IMG/VR virus record: IMGVR_UViG_3300017971_000185
Span: 186,001 to 250,000 of that record
DNA: 64,000 nucleotides
Reading direction: 5' to 3' (one strand)
Shown piece by piece: positions 2,099-59,479 of the stretch. Numbering within the stretch: position 1 is the stretch's first letter; each line of letters starts with the position of its first letter. The position numbers were made by a program, and so were the translations under genes. The notes beneath the pieces were generated by a model. The model was not told where the DNA came from and ran no database searches. It saw only the letters and a list, made by a program, of their open reading frames with translations.

Positions 2099-2925
2099 CG
2101 ACACACGAGGCAGCAGGCGGCACCTACGTCGAGATCTCTCGTGAGGAGTTTGAGGATTGGCTCAACAAGACGGGCTACAAGTGGGAGCGTGATCGATCCA
2201 AGGCCGGAATCTATGTCGTCAAGTTGTCGCCCAACGTAGGTATCCACATCTCATCTTCCATCGGCTCCAGAGACACGGGGCTCGCGAGGGGACGAGCCTC
2301 GGTCAAGATGAAGCTGGTCAGCCTCATCACGGGCTACACGCTCAACAAGAAGGTTCAAGGCCGCGATCACTTCAAGCGTACCAAAGGATGGCGACAGACC
2401 TGGAAGAAGGGTCTGGACGACTTCAAGGGCGCCTACATGAAGGCGAAGGACTGGTACGACAAGCTGGCGACCATCGAGAGCCGGGACGAGTACAAGGACG
2501 AGTGGCTCGGGAAGATCGAGGAGATCGGCGGCTGGGAAACCGATCGGATGCTCAAGGACTTCCACGACAAGCTGGAGAAGGGGAGCGTTCTTTCAGACAA
2601 GCAAGAAGCGGCGATTGAGCGCACCAAAGGACGGGGTGCTGGGCCTGGGAGAGCACCCCAAGAAGCGCCAAATGAGGAGTTGCTTGCCAAGCTGCGGGAG
2701 CTTTGGAAGCGAGCCAAGGCAGCCGCCGATCGCGGGGATCGGGACGGTGAGTGGACGATGGGCTTCGCCCAGAACATGGGCGAGAAGTTGAAGAAGGGGT
2801 GGCGTCTCACGCCCAATGAGAAACGGAAAATCGATGAGAAGCTCAAGAGGTATCGCGTCGCCTCGATGCTCGCGGAAGGTGCGATCCAACGCGTAGCTTC
2901 TCAGTTTCTCGCTAGGAGCCTGTAG
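2095..2925 (+). CDS. Hypothetical protein with C-terminal RVASQFL tag
   Basis: ATG at 2095 overlaps the helicase TGA (ATGA). Lys-rich globular sequence ending AIQRVASQFLARSL. Confidence 0.75.
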   Translation: MTTHEAAGGTYVEISREEFEDWLNKTGYKWERDRSKAGIYVVKLSPNVGIHISSSIGSRDTGLARGRASVKMKLVSLITGYTLNKKVQGRDHFKRTKGWRQTWKKGLDDFKGAYMKAKDWYDKLATIESRDEYKDEWLGKIEEIGGWETDRMLKDFHDKLEKGSVLSDKQEAAIERTKGRGAGPGRAPQEAPNEELLAKLRELWKRAKAAADRGDRDGEWTMGFAQNMGEKLKKGWRLTPNEKRKIDEKLKRYRVASMLAEGAIQRVASQFLARSL

Positions 2926-5273
2926 TGGGAGTCACGACTAGCAGCAACTACCGAGCACTGCTTGAGATCATTGACCTGAGCATCGCCTTGGGCAATGGGA
3001 ACCTGACGGGCGGCAACCATGTCGTGTTCACGTCGGGCGACGAGATGCGCGGTGAGGATCTCATGGGTCCTGGCGCTGCCGGTGCTCTGTTCCTACGGGG
3101 AGGCGATTCGCTGGGAGCGGGAGGCGATGGCGGCGATGTTGCCGTGCGCTTTGGCTCTCCCGATACCACCGGAAACGTAGGCACGATCTACATTGGTGAC
3201 ACGGCTCTGTTGCCTCCGGGTATTCCGGCTGCCGAGATTCCGGGCTCGGTCCTCATTGGTGGGGATACGAGAGTAGCCGATCCGGGTGGCTTGATCTGGG
3301 TCATGGCCGCTGGAGGCAATCCGATGGGGTTGCCTATTGCAGCTCAGGCAGGATCGGTCTGGTGCGAAGCAGGAGGAAGTGTAGGTGCGCTTCCGGGTGG
3401 CCTTTTCTATGCCAGGGGAGGAACAACACCTGTTGGAGCCCCCGTTTCCGGTCTTGGGGGAGTTGAGAATGCTGCCTATCTCCTTGGTGGAGATGCTGAT
3501 AACGATGACGATGCGGGCCAAGTCAACGTACAAGGAGGAGAAAGCAAAGGAACGGCAGGTGATGGGGGTCAGGTCACTGTAGAGGGGGGTCCTATTTTTG
3601 TGGGCGGCAACGTAGGTGGTGTTGGGGGTCCTGTTTATGTACAAGGTGGGGTCAATCTTTCAGGAAGTGGCCAGCCAGGTGGTTTGGTTGATGTAGCAGG
3701 TGGGAATCCTGGCGGAAAGGTCACGATTCAAGGAGGTCCTTCTTCTGTAGCGGTGAGTGGTGGAGATGTGGTTCTTACGCCTGGCGGCGGTGTTGGTGCG
3801 GTTGGTGTAGTTCAGACGACTGATGCAACGTCTGGGCATCAGATGGAGGGCTACTGCACGGTTGGGTCTCTCGCGTCTCCAATAGGGGTGGAAAAGCTAC
3901 GGGTTGTTGGGGATGCGAGAGTCGAAGGTAAGCTCACAGTTACGGGGCTGATTGATCCGACAGGACTTGTTGTTTCGGAGCAGATCGCCAAGCCGTTTGA
4001 TCCGACGGGGACGATTTACGGTGTTTATTGGGTTCAACGGGGAACGCCATGCTTGCCCTACTTCACGGACGATCAAGGCAATGATCACAACTTGCTTGGC
4101 GGTGGTGGTGTAGGCACCTACGATTCTTACCTTGATCAAGGCGCTGGTGCGGATGCAGATCCGATCTTCACGGACATGCCGCCTATCCAGGCGAAGATCG
4201 CAGGGCTTCCCGTACTCTCTGTTGGCTACCCAGCCACCAATACGCTTCATTTTCTCCCTGGCACGAACCTGTCACTCGTTACTCCTTTCATCGGTGCATA
4301 CGCTCTGCCCAACACTGAGATTCGGGGGACTGCGCCCATCGGGCCACTTGGAACAGTGGCCAATGATGCTGCTGTGGTGACGGTTTCCAATGTCGGCTTT
4401 CCGGGAGCTACTTTTGAGGATGTTCGTACGTTTAAAGACGTATGTTTCAGTCATGCGTCCTTTGCGATTGCTCCGACTTTCTTCTTCACGAATTCTCCCT
4501 ACTGCGAGTTTGACAACGTATCGACGCTGATTCCGGCAAATGCAAGTCCCACGGTCGGGATCTGGTATCAGACATTTCCCGGCAAGTTTGAGAGGCTAAG
4601 GATCAACAAGACGATCCTCGGGGGACAGTCTTTCGAGATGGACGGGGGCACACTGGATGTCATCGTAGAAACCGGCAATCAGATCGCAAACAGTGCCTTT
4701 ATTGGAACCGGAAACCTTCGCTTCTTTTTGAAAGGAAGCGGGAATTACATCAGCACTTCGCAAGGTCCCACCCTCGATATCGAGATCGGAGACGGGACTG
4801 TGGGAGTCCCTCCCAAATTCAGCGGAGCCGAGACATTCACGTTTGGTGCGGGCACCCATTCGTGGAATTGGTCGGGAGGGCCCGTACCGCCTGGCACGAC
4901 CGGATACCAACTCTGTCCTGGAGGGGGCATGTTGGTTGGCGATCCGCCCCCTCCCGATCCCGGCGGCGGGGGAACACAGCTTCAAGCGGGCCGAACCGTG
5001 AGAGGTATCGTTCGCGGAATTCACGTTCAGATCGGAGCGAATGTCAGCAACGCGAATTTCAACGTGTGGATCCTCGAAGGCGGTGTCCTGAAGTATCAAG
5101 AGGGTCCGGCCCCGTTCCCCTTCTCTCTTCTTGGATGTGTGGGACTGGGGACATATCTCTCCACGACATTCGCCGAATTGACGGGCACGTTTCCCCTCGC
5201 CGTCTGGATCGTTCCAGCCGCGCTGAGTCAGGGGGACTGGGATCACATCAACGTCTCCTTCTTCGTCAGGTAG
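2925..5273 (+). CDS. Gly-rich virion fibre-like structural protein (782 aa)
   Basis: GTG overlaps the upstream TAG. GGxVxxxGG repeats. Shares GKLTVTGLIDPTG with 14902-19869 and an N-terminal TSSN[YF]RALL motif with 6137-6601. Confidence 0.65.
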   Translation: MGVTTSSNYRALLEIIDLSIALGNGNLTGGNHVVFTSGDEMRGEDLMGPGAAGALFLRGGDSLGAGGDGGDVAVRFGSPDTTGNVGTIYIGDTALLPPGIPAAEIPGSVLIGGDTRVADPGGLIWVMAAGGNPMGLPIAAQAGSVWCEAGGSVGALPGGLFYARGGTTPVGAPVSGLGGVENAAYLLGGDADNDDDAGQVNVQGGESKGTAGDGGQVTVEGGPIFVGGNVGGVGGPVYVQGGVNLSGSGQPGGLVDVAGGNPGGKVTIQGGPSSVAVSGGDVVLTPGGGVGAVGVVQTTDATSGHQMEGYCTVGSLASPIGVEKLRVVGDARVEGKLTVTGLIDPTGLVVSEQIAKPFDPTGTIYGVYWVQRGTPCLPYFTDDQGNDHNLLGGGGVGTYDSYLDQGAGADADPIFTDMPPIQAKIAGLPVLSVGYPATNTLHFLPGTNLSLVTPFIGAYALPNTEIRGTAPIGPLGTVANDAAVVTVSNVGFPGATFEDVRTFKDVCFSHASFAIAPTFFFTNSPYCEFDNVSTLIPANASPTVGIWYQTFPGKFERLRINKTILGGQSFEMDGGTLDVIVETGNQIANSAFIGTGNLRFFLKGSGNYISTSQGPTLDIEIGDGTVGVPPKFSGAETFTFGAGTHSWNWSGGPVPPGTTGYQLCPGGGMLVGDPPPPDPGGGGTQLQAGRTVRGIVRGIHVQIGANVSNANFNVWILEGGVLKYQEGPAPFPFSLLGCVGLGTYLSTTFAELTGTFPLAVWIVPAALSQGDWDHINVSFFVR

Positions 5274-36468: not shown

Positions 36469-36531
36469 AAGGGAAGCGTGGCCATGGAACGCACATCTCA
36501 CGATCGCTCCCGGCGTTGGGTAGCGTAGGGC

Positions 36532-36984
36532 ATGCGGCGAGTCGTCGTTGAGAGCCCCTTCCGCACCACGGACATCAAGGTAGCTGGGCACACAATCACG
36601 ATCAAAGAGGATGACAACGTAGCGTATGCTCGGGCTTGCTTGCATGACTGCCTTCAGCGAGGCGAGTCGCCGTACGCGAGCCATCTGTTGTACACGCAGC
36701 CTGGCGTTCTTGACGATTCCGTGCCAGAGGAACGAGCGAAGGGAATCGAGGCTGGCCTGGAGTGGAAGCGGTCAGCCGATGCCTCGATTGTCTACTGCGA
36801 TCGAGGGGTCACGGCCGGGATGATTCTGGGAATCCAGCTTTCCGAGAAGATTGGCCAGCCCGTCGAGTATCGTCAATTGGGCGGCCAGTGGGCGGTCATG
36901 GAGATCGCAGCCATGAGCCTGGACGAGCTACTGGACGAGTTGAAGGTACTCGCGCATACCACGCATGGCTCTGAGAGCGCCTGA
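36532..36984 (+). CDS. Phage protein of nucleoside-deoxyribosyltransferase-like fold
   Basis: VVVESPF...YARAC..DCL.RGE.PYASHLLYTQPGVLDD..P.ER..GI.AG..W....VY.D.G...GM..GI, a widespread phage family recognised from memory. Confidence 0.65.
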   Translation: MRRVVVESPFRTTDIKVAGHTITIKEDDNVAYARACLHDCLQRGESPYASHLLYTQPGVLDDSVPEERAKGIEAGLEWKRSADASIVYCDRGVTAGMILGIQLSEKIGQPVEYRQLGGQWAVMEIAAMSLDELLDELKVLAHTTHGSESA

Positions 36985-55919: not shown

Positions 55920-55943
55920 CGCTCAGCTACCGTACTCCGAAAT

Positions 55944-57362
55944 CTACTCAAAGGTAAGCATCGGATTCGAGGCTGTGCCGGTCTCGCCTTGGCGGCGATG
56001 CTCCGGTAGTGAGCCTCCGGCCTGACGGTTCAGGCGCCTTGGTATGAGTCCTGCGGAACTGTCCCGACGACGCCGGTATCGCCCTCGCAGCAACTCCCCC
56101 ACGTCTCGGTGATGATCGTCGAGACCGACCTGTTCGTCCTGAGAACGTCTCAGCAGGTTGATCCCTCCCACCACGTCGGCATGAGAACGTCTACCGCAAC
56201 TGCGGCAGACGAAATCGATTCCTGATCGGTTCCGTCGAGAAACGTAACCACAGGAGGGGCAAGTCTGGGACGTGTACGCCGGGTTCACCTTGATCACCGC
56301 TGCCTTCGTCTCCAAAGAGTGGGCCAAGGCCCGGTAGGCGAACCTCTTCTGTCCCCGACATCCTTGAAGGTCGAGATCTTCGATCACGAACACGGTGCCC
56401 TTCGGCGCATCACGGACCAGCTTGTTCGCCGTCTCTCCCGTGATGGTTTTCACCATCCCGGTGAGCTTCGACTCCAAGCGGTCGAGCCGAGGGCTGTTCT
56501 CCTTGAAACCTTGGCGCTGTCGGTTCGCACGAAGGTTCCTGACGCGTTCGTAGAGCCTGTCGAATTTGGGTTTGAGGTCGGCACCGAACGTTCGGCCGTC
56601 AGACGTGGCCGCCACCACGTTCAGGCCGACATCGACACCGATTTTAGGAGCATCTGGCTGAGGCTCGGGGACGACCCACTCCTTCTTCTCGACAACCTCG
56701 AACCGCCATCGGCCCCGCTTGTCCTTGCGAGCGTGGACTCCCTTCGACACGTCCGAAGAGGACCCGACGTAAGGATTTCCGTTCAGCGGAAGCCAGATGA
56801 CTTTCCGGCTGACCAACGTGGAGATCTTGATCCACATCGGAGCCATCGCAGCTTCGTTGGCGTCGGCCAGCGTGCAGGTGTTCTCCGACATCCGCATGGG
56901 GATACGGTCAGACACTCTCGGCGGGTTCCCGGAGACCTCGGGGTCGAGGAGAAGTTTCCAGTAGGCGTCGATGGCTTCCTGGGTGACATGCTTCCAAGGA
57001 ACGGAGATCAGGTGCTTGCCCACGGTGCAGAGGGCATGTCGCTCATCTTGGGAGATCTGGCCGAACCTATGGAGACGGGTGAGGTGCTTCTTGATGGCAC
57101 GCTCGTAGGTTGCCTTGGCCCAGGTACTTACGATCTGGATGGCGTGGTCTCGTGCGTTCTTCTGGATCTGGGACGTGAGCTTTTCAGCCTTTGGGAAGAA
57201 GGCTTGTTTCTTGGACCGCTTGAGGTTGAGCCTCCGGCCATCGAACATCGCCTGCACGCAAATACGGACGTACTTGACGTACTCCACATGCAGGGCCTCC
57301 AGGGCAGCGACCTTGCCTTGGTTGGTCTCCGGGTGGAGATAGAGGTGGCGTGACTTCTTCAC
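55944..57362 (-). mobile_element. tnpB: Stand-alone TnpB (IS200/IS605/IS607-type RNA-guided nuclease) gene
   Basis: RuvC I GVDVG, RuvC II VIEDL, Zn finger TSQTCPSCG..F.C.SCG, RuvC III HADVVG.IN. No tnpA and no CRISPR array nearby. Opposite strand to the upstream neighbours. Confidence 0.9.
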
Positions 57363-57493
57363 GAAAAACGGTAGTTTAGCATGGAAACGGGCGGTAGGTT
57401 CTCTCAGGAATGCTTAGGTTTACTGGGATTTGGCGTCAACAGTTCGCAACCCCGATACTCCTTCAGCACGGTGACCTTGGGAGTTGCGCTTTT

Positions 57494-58558
57494 CTATTGG
57501 AGAAGAGGCAGGATCTTGTCCCGAGCCTCGGGATGCTCGTAAGCAAGTCGGATGAGAGCCTTCCGCAGACTCCCTTCCTTCTTGAGCTTGCTCTTGTGCT
57601 TCTCCTTGTATTTTTTCTGCTTGTCCTCGGCAAGCGGTTCGCCTTGGAAGTCGGCTTGATAGACACCGGGTTGGGACGCTGCTTCATGGAGCAGATCGTC
57701 CATGTCCATGTCAATCACTACGACTTCCATGGTGCGCTTGGGATCGATTGTGAGCACGGCTGCCCAACGGTGGTGTCCGTCGAGGATGTAGCCGTCGCGT
57801 GAGATCATCACCTTGGGTTCTTCGGTCAGCGCGTTGAATTTGCCTTTGAGATGGGCGTCTGCGATGCCGAAGGTCTTGGCCGCCTTGATCTCTTTCTGCG
57901 TGGCCTTTAGCTCTCCAACACGAACGCGGGATTGCTTCGATCCGGCTCCCGCTTCCTCGAAACGGTCGAGCATCTGACGCATGATGGGGCGGTCGTCATC
58001 GGGATCGGCTCCCGCCTGGACCATCGCCTGACCTTTCTTGCGCTCTAGCTCGTCATCGGAATCGAGCATCTCGCGGACTGACTTGCCGCCTTCGATCTGG
58101 GGCATCTTGTCTCGCGTGAGCCCTTTGTTCTCGACACAGACGGGAGGGCTCATCTTGCAGACATCGGCGCCAGCTTCAATGCCTTCCCTGACTTTCTGGG
58201 CGATCTCGGCAGCCTGGATCGCGTCGTCTCCGACAATCTCCAGGTTGTACTCTTTGATGGCTTCGCGATGCTCTTTCGGCAAGTCCTTGGGTTCCGCAGG
58301 AGGCTTGCCTTTGCGCTTTTCGAGCATCTTCTCGCCTCCTTTGGGGCTCTCCACGGGGATCTTCTCCGTGTCTGCTGGGCCTTTCTTCTCCTCTTTCGGC
58401 TTGCCCTTGGTCTTTTTCTCCGCGACTGTGTGAGCCTTGGGATCGGCGTCGGGGTGCTCCTCAAGATACTTCTTGAGTGCCTTCTCGGTGGGAAACTCCC
58501 CGGCCTCTCGCTCCATTCGAAGAGCGAGCACACGAGCCTGCTGGCGAAGATCGTGCAT
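57494..58558 (-). CDS. ParB/Srx-like domain protein with terminal tags
   Basis: LKATQKEI...VMISRDGYILDGHHRWAA. N-terminal ARVLALRM and C-terminal LRKALIRLAYEHP..R..ILPLL. Confidence 0.7.
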   Translation of the reverse strand: MHDLRQQARVLALRMEREAGEFPTEKALKKYLEEHPDADPKAHTVAEKKTKGKPKEEKKGPADTEKIPVESPKGGEKMLEKRKGKPPAEPKDLPKEHREAIKEYNLEIVGDDAIQAAEIAQKVREGIEAGADVCKMSPPVCVENKGLTRDKMPQIEGGKSVREMLDSDDELERKKGQAMVQAGADPDDDRPIMRQMLDRFEEAGAGSKQSRVRVGELKATQKEIKAAKTFGIADAHLKGKFNALTEEPKVMISRDGYILDGHHRWAAVLTIDPKRTMEVVVIDMDMDDLLHEAASQPGVYQADFQGEPLAEDKQKKYKEKHKSKLKKEGSLRKALIRLAYEHPEARDKILPLLQ

Positions 58559-58915
58559 CTAGCTCAGCTTGCCAATGACGTTTCGGATGCGCTCACGCAA
58601 TTGTCGAAGCTGCCTGAATCCGAAATTCATGTTGGCTGGTGCGCCGTGGGTCATGTCTGTCTCGATTGCGTCCATCAATCGTCCACAAACATCAGCGAGG
58701 ATCATCATCCGCATTCTCGGTTGCTTCGGCATGGCTTGCCGTAGCAGTGGGATGATCTCTTGGATCTGATCCTTGATTTTGTCGCCCGCCGTCTCCTCGG
58801 GTAGCTCCTCTGAGTACCCTTCCTTGATTAGCGGAAGAACCGCGTCCCGAACCTCACCGGGGTTCTCGTGAGCCAGTCGGATCAGGGCTTTGCGTAGTTC
58901 TTGCGAGTCAGCCAT
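58559..58915 (-). CDS. Small protein beginning LRKALIRLAHENP..RDAVLPLI
   Basis: Its TAG directly abuts the in-frame ATG of 57494-58558. Confidence 0.7.
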   Translation of the reverse strand: MADSQELRKALIRLAHENPGEVRDAVLPLIKEGYSEELPEETAGDKIKDQIQEIIPLLRQAMPKQPRMRMMILADVCGRLMDAIETDMTHGAPANMNFGFRQLRQLRERIRNVIGKLS

Positions 58916-59053: not shown

Positions 59054-59479
59054 ATGGGTACGTCAAAGATCACGGCGAAGGATTGTCGCAAGTGTGGCTT
59101 GTGTTGCGTCTCTCTACACGATCAAGATGCTTTGGCCGACGTGACTCAAAAAGACATGGACCGACTCAATCCTCGTTGGGCTTCCGCTAACGTCCTAGCC
59201 ATGTCTTCGTTCGATTTTGTGGTGGCTGCCGTGAATGGGCGTCGTCTGCCGCCGGGTGCTATCCGAACCAAGTGGAAGCTCCAACGATGTGGCCCGCTTC
59301 GGGGCGTAGCGGCGTGTGCTTGCGTGGCTCTCCGAGGGTCTGTACTACACCGCACGTCGTGTTCGATCTACAAGAGACGCCCGGATAGTTGTCGGACAGC
59401 CGTGAAACCAGGAGACCAGGCTTGTTTGGAGATCCGGCGACACTGGTCAGAACATGTACAAGAGGTATGCGATGACTGA
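59054..59479 (+). CDS. YkgJ-like CxxCxxCC (Zn/Fe-S) protein
   Basis: CRKCGLCC ... CVAL..CSIY..RP..CR. Confidence 0.8.
   Translation: MGTSKITAKDCRKCGLCCVSLHDQDALADVTQKDMDRLNPRWASANVLAMSSFDFVVAAVNGRRLPPGAIRTKWKLQRCGPLRGVAACACVALRGSVLHRTSCSIYKRRPDSCRTAVKPGDQACLEIRRHWSEHVQEVCDD

What the first reader, a model, noticed from the sequence alone, without database searches (positions are those of the whole stretch)
57494..58915. Two genes fused in frame by a bare TAG-ATG junction and bracketed by the same 25-aa motif
Seen: on the minus strand, ...AAG CTG AGC TAG ATG CAC...: the stop of 58559-58915 is immediately followed by the in-frame ATG of 57494-58558, with no obvious RBS. The upstream protein starts ELRKALIRLAHENPGEVRDAVLPLI and the downstream ParB-like protein ends SLRKALIRLAYEHPEARDKILPLL. 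Amber readthrough would give one protein of about 473 aa with the motif at both ends. Inference: a second class of packaging or oligomerisation tag, with either regulated readthrough or a recent split.
Basis: partly seen in the sequence, partly recalled or inferred. Interest (0 to 1): 0.6.

Follow-up and report, generated by a model that had tools for sequence, protein, structure and literature searches.

The report
Coupled phage genes sharing hairpin tag
Two neighbouring genes of a 497-kb uncultivated phage are ordinary separate genes joined by a stop-start junction, but the short motif they share is an undescribed helical-hairpin tag found on 23 unrelated proteins of this phage and on thousands of metagenomic proteins.

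Summary
On the minus strand, ORF A (58559-58915, 118 aa) ends in TAG, and the in-frame ATG of ORF B (57494-58558, 354 aa, ParB/Srx fold) follows directly. ORF A starts with a 27-aa motif and ORF B ends with it.

Readthrough or a recent split is not supported:
- TAG ends 38% of ORFs.
- None of the 46 tRNAs is a suppressor.
- TAGATG, ATGA and TGATG junctions are common in this genome.
- ORF A homologues all stop at the same place. Their downstream gene lies in another frame, or ORF A is absent.
- ORF B aligns from its first residues with its own family, so it lacks no N-terminal part.

The motif is the real finding. It is a helix-turn-helix hairpin (consensus LRxxLIRLAHxNPxLRxxLLPLL) conserved at protein level.
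- It sits just after the start Met in 21 of 23 carriers, whose bodies are unrelated.
- No Pfam, NCBIfam or PHROG model covers it.
- It matches 3,869 cluster representatives, often 2-6 copies per protein.
- In 40 of 119 ORF B homologues it brackets one polypeptide at both ends.

My best inference, unproven, is that it is a docking tag that pairs hairpin with hairpin. A packaging tag is the main rival.

The parts
58559..58915 (-). ORF A: 118-aa all-helical protein with the N-terminal hairpin tag and an 86-aa body that has no detectable relatives outside its own close homologues. Its stop is the TAG at 58559-58561.
   Evidence: Pfam, PHROGs and NCBIfam found nothing.
58820..58900 (-). Hairpin tag of ORF A (residues 6-32), the subtype with the longer NPGEVRD turn.
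   Evidence: HMM E 2.6e-16; alignment A1.
58556..58561 (-). TAG|ATG stop-start junction with zero spacer, in frame. I read it as a translational-coupling junction.
   Evidence: There are 10 such TAGATG junctions in the genome. Contigs of three runs show no differences here.
57494..58558 (-). ORF B: 354-aa ParB/Srx-fold protein. Its stop is the TAG at 57494-57496.
   Evidence: AF2 pLDDT 88, pTM 0.74. BFVD ParB/Sulfiredoxin hits reach E 2.6e-10. The top PDB Foldseek hits are all ParB/Srx but weak. phrog_2859 E 8e-19. 173 homologues.
58511..58552 (-). Degenerate, half-length remnant of the family's N-terminal hairpin (ORF B residues 3-16).
   Evidence: Family alignment A2. The same remnant is present in relatives P0010 and P0011.
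58424..58498 (-). Conserved element (EFPTxxAL-KYLxEHPxADPxxHTV) that follows the hairpin throughout the ORF B family.
   Evidence: It recurs after each hairpin in the 1238-aa protein of L002.
57764..57781 (-). DGHHRW, the invariant ParB/Srx-type active-site motif (ORF B residues 260-265).
   Evidence: Invariant columns in A2. Weak profile matches to 1vk1 and SerK fall at this site.
57497..57574 (-). Hairpin tag at the extreme C-terminus of ORF B (residues 329-354), the short-turn subtype.
   Evidence: HMM E 2.9e-12. AF2 models helices 329-341 and 343-353.
55928..57452 (-). IS200/IS605-type element carrying tnpB (ORF 55944-57362), inserted 41 nt downstream of the ORF B stop. It probably removed an ancestral C-terminal extension of ORF B.
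   Evidence: Pfam Cas12f1-like_TNB 1.3e-14 and OrfB_IS605. Element ends are defined by copies at genome 330183-331629 and 36510-36905. Other contigs diverge at 57452. The alignment to P0009 runs past the ORF B stop as far as the element edge.

Best explanation
ORF A and ORF B are two separate genes of a huge phage (a 497-kb IMG/VR record). Translation stops at the TAG. Because ORF B has no Shine-Dalgarno-like sequence, it is most likely started by ribosomes that terminate ORF A and re-initiate at the abutting ATG (translational coupling, inferred). That the two are in frame is incidental.

The shared 27-aa motif is a portable helix-turn-helix hairpin conserved at protein level. It is attached to the start, the end or the module boundaries of many unrelated proteins. 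ORF B belongs to a ParB/Srx-fold family whose usual form carries one hairpin at each end. In this lineage the N-terminal hairpin has decayed to a half-length remnant. The exact C-terminal position of the other hairpin probably follows loss of a tail next to an IS insertion.

For the tag itself, my most likely mechanism (inferred, about 40%) is that hairpins pair with one another into four-helix bundles. One-tag proteins such as ORF A would then dock onto two-tag proteins and onto multi-hairpin, largely low-complexity scaffold proteins, gathering enzymes (ParB/Srx, a J-domain protein, RelA/SpoT, GNAT) into one phage assembly.
For: Separate genes (shown):
- TAG ends 203 of 531 ORFs, and coding density is 0.906 under code 11.
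- None of the 46 tRNAs has a CUA anticodon.
- Tight junctions are routine in this genome, and all 10 zero-spacer junctions are TAGATG.
- ORF A homologues P0002 and P0003 end at the same C-terminus. Their next gene overlaps by 1 or 4 nt, or follows after 41 nt, always in another frame.
- Relatives of ORF B at 76% identity lack ORF A upstream.
- ORF B aligns end to end with its family.

The motif is a tag (shown):
- 23 carriers in the genome, 21 with the motif 1-6 residues after the start Met.
- The carrier bodies are unrelated, apart from one pair.
- Identical residues share a codon only 42% of the time, so this is not a DNA repeat.
- 3,869 representatives match at E<=1e-3. Each of the top 150 has at least 2 copies detected (HMMER lists up to 6), placed N-terminally (117), C-terminally (62) or internally (175).
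- 40 of 119 ORF B homologues carry it at both ends.
- The 1238-aa protein of L002 has a hairpin between modules.

Hairpins pair (weak, model-based):
- AF2 models the tag as two helices.
- A natural 63-aa protein made only of two hairpins (P0246) is modelled as a compact four-helix bundle: pLDDT 85, pTM 0.63, all 63 residues superposing on generic bundles.
- Both C-tagged proteins of this genome lie directly after an N-tagged small gene: this pair, and genome 277789-278681 with a TAG-CC-ATG junction.
- Mini-proteins consist of hairpins joined by charged low-complexity linkers.
Against: No experiment or direct measurement shows coupling or binding. The complex prediction for ORF A with ORF B gave no verdict (score 0.00). 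The four-helix-bundle model comes from a single sequence and reflects only the predictor's confidence. The N-terminal decay of ORF B also occurs in relatives without ORF A upstream, so ORF A need not be a stand-in for the lost hairpin. Some associated domains (ParB/Srx, RelA/SpoT) are those that Iyer et al. 2017 (PMC5512222) assign to phage proteins predicted to be packaged. That favours a packaging-receptor model over pure self-pairing.
Confidence: 0.6

Rival explanations
1. The hairpin is a capsid-loading (packaging) tag. It binds a receptor inside the procapsid (coat, scaffold or core), so tagged enzymes are packaged and injected. This would resemble the T4 capsid targeting sequence or the coat-binding helix-turn-helix of the P22 scaffolding protein. 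Multi-hairpin proteins would act as scaffold.
For: The tag is mostly N-terminal. ParB/Srx and RelA/SpoT domains are typical of phage polyvalent proteins predicted to be packaged (PMC5512222). A helix-turn-helix of similar size is the P22 coat-binding unit (abstract listed: 10.1101/2022.12.13.520362). Giant phages package many ejection proteins (abstracts listed: PMC5694885, PMC7411985).
Against: The only tag cluster whose neighbours I examined lies among NAD synthetase, NAMPT and helicase genes, not head genes. No head gene or prohead protease was located (inconclusive). C-terminal and internal copies are not expected of a T4-type N-terminal signal. There are no virion proteomics.
Confidence: 0.25
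2. ORF A and ORF B are the two halves of a recently split gene, and the family's N-terminal hairpin now lies on ORF A.
For: Canonical family members carry the hairpin at both ends. ORF B lacks an intact N-terminal hairpin, and ORF A provides one directly upstream and in frame.
Against: The 86-aa body of ORF A matches no part of any of 119 ORF B homologues. ORF B keeps its own N-terminal remnant and aligns from residue 1. Relatives with the same remnant have no ORF A upstream. In the closest relatives the two genes lie in different frames.
Confidence: 0.06
3. Programmed amber readthrough yields a 473-aa fusion with the hairpin at both ends.
For: The arrangement is in frame with zero spacer. Nothing else supports it.
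Against: There is no suppressor tRNA. TAG is a common stop. Nine other TAGATG junctions exist. The frame is not conserved in relatives whose proteins are 82-91% identical. The host's own tRNAs are unknown.
Confidence: 0.03
4. The hairpin binds a host factor or nucleic acid (for example a chaperone, polymerase or DNA) rather than other phage proteins, and acts as a shared host-takeover handle.
For: It is a short, basic, amphipathic helix-turn-helix. It sits on many small early-type proteins of unknown function.
Against: Multiple copies per protein, and mini-proteins made of hairpins only, fit assembly better. No known DNA-binding family matched.
Confidence: 0.06

Closest known systems
Translationally coupled gene pairs with abutting or overlapping stop and start codons (termination-reinitiation)
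   Same: The stop is directly followed by the start, and I see no Shine-Dalgarno-like sequence before the second gene. The same style occurs at about 250 junctions in this genome.
   Different: Nothing differs in kind. Being in frame is incidental: for a TAG stop, TAGATG is the closest possible ATG placement.
ParB/sulfiredoxin-fold phage proteins, including the DdrB-like ParB domains of polyvalent proteins (Iyer et al. 2017, PMC5512222)
   Same: ORF B has the fold and a DGHHR-type motif. It is phage-encoded. Relatives occur inside large multi-module proteins.
   Different: ORF B is below the Pfam ParBc_2 threshold (13.4 against 23.6 bits). It has an invariant cysteine pair and the KYLxEHP element. 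I did not test membership of the DdrB-like subfamily. The flanking hairpin tags are not mentioned in any of the 12 of 33 passages I read of that paper.
T4 capsid targeting sequence and giant-phage propeptides
   Same: A short N-terminal element shared by unrelated proteins of one phage.
   Different: The hairpin is longer (27 aa, folded). It also occurs at C-termini, internally and in tandem. No cleavage has been shown, and no link to head genes was found.
Coat-binding helix-turn-helix of the P22 scaffolding protein (10.1101/2022.12.13.520362; PMC12005531)
   Same: A small terminal helix-turn-helix that mediates a protein-protein contact and can carry cargo.
   Different: No sequence relation was tested. 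The gene position is not scaffold-like. The comparison is a lead from my own knowledge, not a test.
Terminal docking or dimerisation domains (PKS/NRPS docking domains, the RIIa-type D/D helix-turn-helix)
   Same: Short helical modules at protein termini that pair into four-helix bundles and link separate polypeptides. This matches the modelled bundle of P0246.
   Different: This is an analogy from my own knowledge. There was no Pfam match, and pairing has not been demonstrated.

Membership tests
Programmed stop-codon readthrough or amber recoding | A suppressor tRNA (CUA anticodon) or other recoding machinery is present | tested here: not met
   aragorn found 46 tRNAs and none with CUA. The host's tRNAs are unknown.
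Programmed stop-codon readthrough or amber recoding | TAG is avoided as a terminator, or ORFs lengthen markedly when TAG is read as sense | tested here: not met
   TAG ends 203 of 531 ORFs. Coding density is 0.906 under code 11 and 0.916 with TAG read as sense.
Programmed stop-codon readthrough or amber recoding | The in-frame arrangement is conserved in relatives | tested here: not met
   Gene tables of four related contigs show a 1-nt overlap, a 4-nt overlap or a 41-nt gap, all in other frames. ORF A is absent in L013 and L016.
Translationally coupled gene pair | Stop and start abut or overlap, and the downstream gene lacks its own ribosome-binding site | tested here: met
   TAGATG, with no GGAGG-like element in the 20 nt upstream. 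Most tag-defined starts in the genome do have one.
Translationally coupled gene pair | Downstream translation depends on upstream translation | not testable with these tools
   This needs reporter or ribosome-profiling experiments.
ParB/Srx superfamily (ORF B) | ParB/Srx alpha+beta fold | tested here: met
   AF2 model with pLDDT 88. BFVD ParB/Sulfiredoxin proteins hit at E 2.6e-10 to 1e-6. PDB rows 1-9 are all Srx, ParB or Noc, but with E>=0.13.
ParB/Srx superfamily (ORF B) | Conserved arginine-containing active-site motif (DGHHR type) | tested here: met
   DGHHRW is invariant in 66 homologues.
ParB/Srx superfamily (ORF B) | Passes the Pfam gathering score of a ParB family | tested here: not met
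   ParBc_2 scores 13.4 bits against a cut-off of 23.6.
Phage polyvalent proteins (Iyer et al. 2017) | Two to fifteen effector domains in one polypeptide, often with a processing peptidase, in a late or virion gene context | tested here: inconclusive
   ORF B itself has one catalytic domain. Its relative in L002 has two ParB modules plus others in 1238 aa. No peptidase domain and no virion context were found or examined.
T4-type capsid targeting sequence | An N-terminal signal removed by the prohead protease, on proteins found in the head | not testable with these tools
   The N-terminal position is met for 21 of 23 carriers. Cleavage and virion location cannot be tested. The Peptidase_S77 search was blank, but its controls were also silent.
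Scaffolding-protein coat-binding helix-turn-helix | The gene lies in the head module next to the portal, protease or major capsid genes | tested here: not met
   The neighbours of the three-hairpin gene are NAD synthetase, NAMPT and a helicase. Only one locus was examined.
Any curated family covering the hairpin motif | A Pfam, NCBIfam or PHROG model matches the 27-aa motif | tested here: not met
   No model covered the motif in ORF A or ORF B in any of the three libraries. Pfam also found none in 99 multi-copy proteins, nor NCBIfam in five of them. Searches for four motif strings (e.g. IRLAHENP, LIRLAH) found no papers.
IS200/IS605 TnpB element (neighbour) | A TnpB (OrfB_IS605 plus Cas12f-like TNB) ORF inside a repeated element with defined ends | tested here: met
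   Pfam hits. A second copy at 82% identity and a deletion derivative define the ends at 55928 and 57452. Other contigs diverge at 57452.

The most novel reading that the evidence does not exclude
The hairpin is the connector of an undescribed modular docking system of huge phages. One-tag client proteins (ParB/Srx nuclease, J-domain protein, RelA/SpoT, GNAT and many small unknowns) plug into multi-hairpin, low-complexity scaffold proteins by hairpin-hairpin four-helix bundles. This would build a phage-made protein assembly, either a cytoplasmic hub or condensate or the packaged protein cargo of the capsid.
Probability: 0.3. Interest if true: 0.8.

Novelty: new variant of a known kind. Interest (0 to 1): 0.5.

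Why it matters
The junction itself does not matter: it is routine operon architecture, and it warns against reading in-frame stop-start junctions as recoding.

The tag may matter. Huge phages carry hundreds of genes with no known function. Here one short, recognisable module links 23 of them in a single genome and about 3,900 protein clusters in metagenomes. If it is a docking or loading signal, it would sort a large set of unknown proteins into one functional compartment. It would point to the scaffold and receptor proteins. It would also offer a compact natural tag for assembling or encapsulating proteins. A profile such as A1 could be turned into a family model to annotate these proteins.

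Tried and rejected
- Complex prediction of ORF A with ORF B gave no verdict (score 0.00). It is not evidence either way.
- Searches of the genome for Peptidase_S77, Gp23 and Phage_capsid found nothing. The controls were silent for the first two, so the head module was not located.
- A profile search of PDB sequences with the ORF B family gave only weak ParB/Srx-type hits (E 0.24-0.32).
- The ESM Atlas gave no usable lead for ORF A.
- ORF A has no relatives in IMG/VR.
- Literature searches for four motif strings found no papers.
- I considered that the motif reflects a DNA-level repeat or recombination site. I rejected this because synonymous positions are scrambled: identical residues share a codon only 42% of the time.
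- I considered that ORF A replaces the lost N-terminal hairpin of ORF B in trans. I kept this only as a weak idea, because relatives with the same decayed N-terminus lack ORF A upstream.
- I looked for another class of recurrent terminal motif in the genome by all-against-all BLAST and found none.
- No alternative genetic code was applied, because the genome shows none.

Full report
**Context.** The window is bases 186001-250000 of a single 497,194-bp contig with 57.7% G+C. The contig is held as an IMG/VR virus record, is linear, and CheckV estimates it 94% complete. It carries 46 tRNA genes. The stretch occurs in sediment and seawater metagenomes from at least eight studies. It is therefore an uncultivated huge phage.

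**The observation.** On the minus strand, ORF A (58559-58915, 118 aa) ends in TAG, and the next three bases are the in-frame ATG of ORF B (57494-58558, 354 aa). ORF A begins with the motif at residues 6-32, and ORF B ends with it at residues 329-354. A motif HMM scores these at E 2.6e-16 and 2.9e-12 against all frames of the genome. Contigs from three runs of different studies cover the junction without any difference, although two of those runs may be the source of this record. The exact ORF A protein is recorded on 14 contigs. The description is correct.

**Is the TAG read through?** Nothing in the genome suggests it.
- Under the standard code, 531 greedy ORFs of at least 80 aa cover 90.6% of the genome, and 203 of them end in TAG. 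Reading TAG as sense raises coverage only to 91.6%.
- None of the 46 tRNAs has a CUA anticodon.
- Tight junctions are the rule: 192 ATGA/GTGA overlaps, 41 TGATG/TAATG overlaps and 10 zero-spacer in-frame junctions between ORFs of at least 80 aa. These are all-frame ORFs, so some are spurious.
- All 10 zero-spacer junctions are TAGATG. For a TAG stop, this is simply the closest an ATG can sit.
- Most starts that the tag defines precisely have a GGAG/GAGG element upstream. ORF B has none. Re-initiation by ribosomes terminating ORF A is therefore the likeliest way ORF B is translated. This step is inferred.

**Relatives.** ORF A has only two close homologues, P0002 (115 aa, 89%) and P0003 (113 aa, 82%). 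Both end at the same C-terminus. No DNA could be fetched for their contigs, but the gene tables show a separate downstream gene each time. Its position is a 1-nt overlap (2679-3026, then 3026-4798), a 4-nt overlap (92-433, then 430-624) or a 41-nt gap (twice), always in a different frame. The protein closest to ORF B (P0009, 91%) is preceded by a 111-aa gene with the same 41-nt gap. In relatives at 76% identity (L013, L016) no ORF A-like sequence lies upstream at all.

**Is it a split gene?** ORF B has 173 homologues. The family consensus runs as follows: Met, hairpin, an EFxTxxAL-KYLxEHPxADxxxHxV element, a domain with an invariant cysteine pair and an invariant DGHHRW, and a second hairpin at the end. 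Among the 119 listed homologues:

| Hairpin position | Homologues |
|---|---|
| Both ends of one polypeptide | 40 |
| N-terminus only | 22 |
| C-terminus only | 8 |
| After the ParB domain, followed by more than 60 aa | 7 |
| None detected | 42 |

ORF B aligns with these from its first residues. Where they have the N-terminal hairpin, ORF B has a 14-residue remnant, as do P0010 and P0011. The 86-aa body of ORF A matches no part of any family member. ORF B is therefore a complete family member with a decayed N-terminal hairpin, and ORF A is a different tagged gene.

**What ORF B is.** AlphaFold2 with 66 homologues gives pLDDT 88 and pTM 0.74, and models the C-terminal tag as two helices at 329-341 and 343-353. 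Foldseek against viral models finds proteins named ParB/Sulfiredoxin at E 2.6e-10 and below, some inside phage proteins of 700-1300 aa. Against the PDB, the first nine rows are all sulfiredoxin, ParB or Noc, but they are weak (E>=0.13). Pfam ParBc_2 is below threshold. I call ORF B a ParB/Srx-fold protein. Whether it is a nuclease or an NTPase is not shown.

**The C-terminal position.** An IS200/IS605-type element with tnpB occupies 55928-57452. Its ends are defined by a second copy (genome 330183-331629, 82% identity) and a deletion derivative (36510-36905). Other contigs diverge exactly at 57452. P0009 continues 95 aa beyond its hairpin. Its alignment to this genome runs about 18 codons past the ORF B stop and ends at the element edge. 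ORF B has therefore probably lost a tail, which leaves the hairpin at its very end. Many family members end there naturally.

**The motif.** The consensus is LRxxLIRLAHxNPxLRxxLLPLL.
- In this genome 23 proteins carry it at E<1e-8. In 21 it starts 1-6 residues after the start Met. One protein has three copies.
- The carriers include a J-domain protein. Apart from one pair, their bodies are unrelated.
- Identical residues in different copies share a codon only 42% of the time, so selection acts on the protein.
- No Pfam, NCBIfam or PHROG model covers it, and searches for four motif strings found no papers.
- A profile of 35 copies finds 3,869 of 1.84 billion cluster representatives at E<=1e-3, and 375 at E<=1e-10.
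- Each of the best 150 has at least 2 copies detected, and HMMER lists up to 6. Of these copies, 117 are N-terminal, 62 C-terminal and 175 internal. Both-ends and start-plus-internal arrangements are frequent.
- Pfam domains attached to the motif are few: RelA/SpoT, GNAT, WGR and pentapeptide repeats.
- Some proteins are only hairpins joined by charged low-complexity linkers that carry other recurrent short motifs.
- In L002 a 1238-aa protein reads ParB, hairpin, ParB, hairpin, coiled region, hairpin, end domain.
- The exact eight-residue core occurs at 19 sites in 14 IMG/VR contigs. Four sites are in one 372-kb contig and two in one 485-kb contig.

**How the tag may work.** This part is inference.
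- The hairpin is amphipathic.
- P0246, a natural 63-aa protein consisting of two hairpins, is modelled from its single sequence as a compact four-helix bundle (pLDDT 85, pTM 0.63). All 63 residues superpose on generic four-helix bundles, with no specific relative (Z<=6.2).
- Both C-tagged proteins of this genome follow an N-tagged small gene directly: this pair, and genome 277789-278681 with a TAG-CC-ATG junction.

I therefore favour hairpin-hairpin pairing that docks one-tag proteins onto two-tag and multi-hairpin proteins. The direct test, a complex prediction for ORF A with ORF B, gave no verdict.

The main rival is a capsid-loading tag that binds a head component. ParB/Srx and RelA/SpoT domains are typical of phage polyvalent proteins predicted to be packaged (PMC5512222). 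Small terminal helix-turn-helix units and N-terminal targeting sequences are known loading devices (titles and abstracts listed). However, the only tag cluster whose neighbours I examined lies among NAD-salvage and helicase genes, and I could not locate the head module. The two models are not exclusive.

**Verdict.** The junction is ordinary, and the readthrough or split idea is not supported. The shared motif is a real, widespread and apparently undescribed terminal hairpin module. Its function is open and should be tested.

Noticed in passing
window 55928-57452 (tnpB ORF 55944-57362, minus strand): An IS200/IS605-type TnpB element sits 41 nt downstream of ORF B. A second copy (82% identity) lies at genome 330183-331629, and a roughly 400-bp deletion derivative at 36510-36905. 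The alignment to P0009, the protein closest to ORF B, continues past the ORF B stop as far as the element edge, so the insertion probably removed a C-terminal extension.
   Followed up: partly
L004 1290-2182 (genome 277789-278681, minus strand): This is a second pair of the same design. A 108-aa gene with the N-terminal hairpin is followed, after TAG-CC-ATG, by a 187-aa gene with the hairpin 20 residues from its C-terminus. The DNA just before the two junctions is loosely similar (..TGAGCTA..).
   Followed up: partly
whole genome (G000): All ten zero-spacer in-frame stop-ATG junctions between ORFs of at least 80 aa are TAGATG, and none uses TGA or TAA. With TGA stops the genome uses ATGA or TGATG overlaps instead. 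Some of the ten may involve non-coding frames.
   Followed up: partly
L009 1343-2314 (genome 390842-391816, plus strand): A 324-aa acidic protein carries three hairpins joined by low-complexity linkers. One linker motif (EKEGxFExGEDVPL...PPPSVxKVKEKIK) recurs in unrelated metagenomic multi-hairpin proteins. So do two other short motifs: an FTQQEF-type motif and a two-cysteine AGCEKLPEGPMRDNC-type motif.
   Followed up: partly
L003 1905-2894 (genome 251905-252894, minus strand): A 330-aa protein has the N-terminal hairpin followed directly by a DnaJ (J) domain (Pfam E 3.6e-10). It lies in a cluster of four tagged genes just beyond the window's end.
   Followed up: no
window 58424-58498, and L002 2822-6538: A conserved element, KYLxEHPxADPxxHTV, follows the hairpin at the start of ORF B family members. 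It recurs after each hairpin inside the 1238-aa multi-module protein of L002. Its role is unknown.
   Followed up: no
genome 310706-376140: All 46 tRNA genes lie within one 65-kb region. aragorn reports one (368101-368173) with an irregular two-base anticodon call.
   Followed up: no
window 59054-59479 (plus strand): The gene divergent from ORF A encodes a 141-aa CxxCxxCC putative zinc- or iron-chelating domain protein (Pfam PF03692, E 6.9e-07).
   Followed up: no
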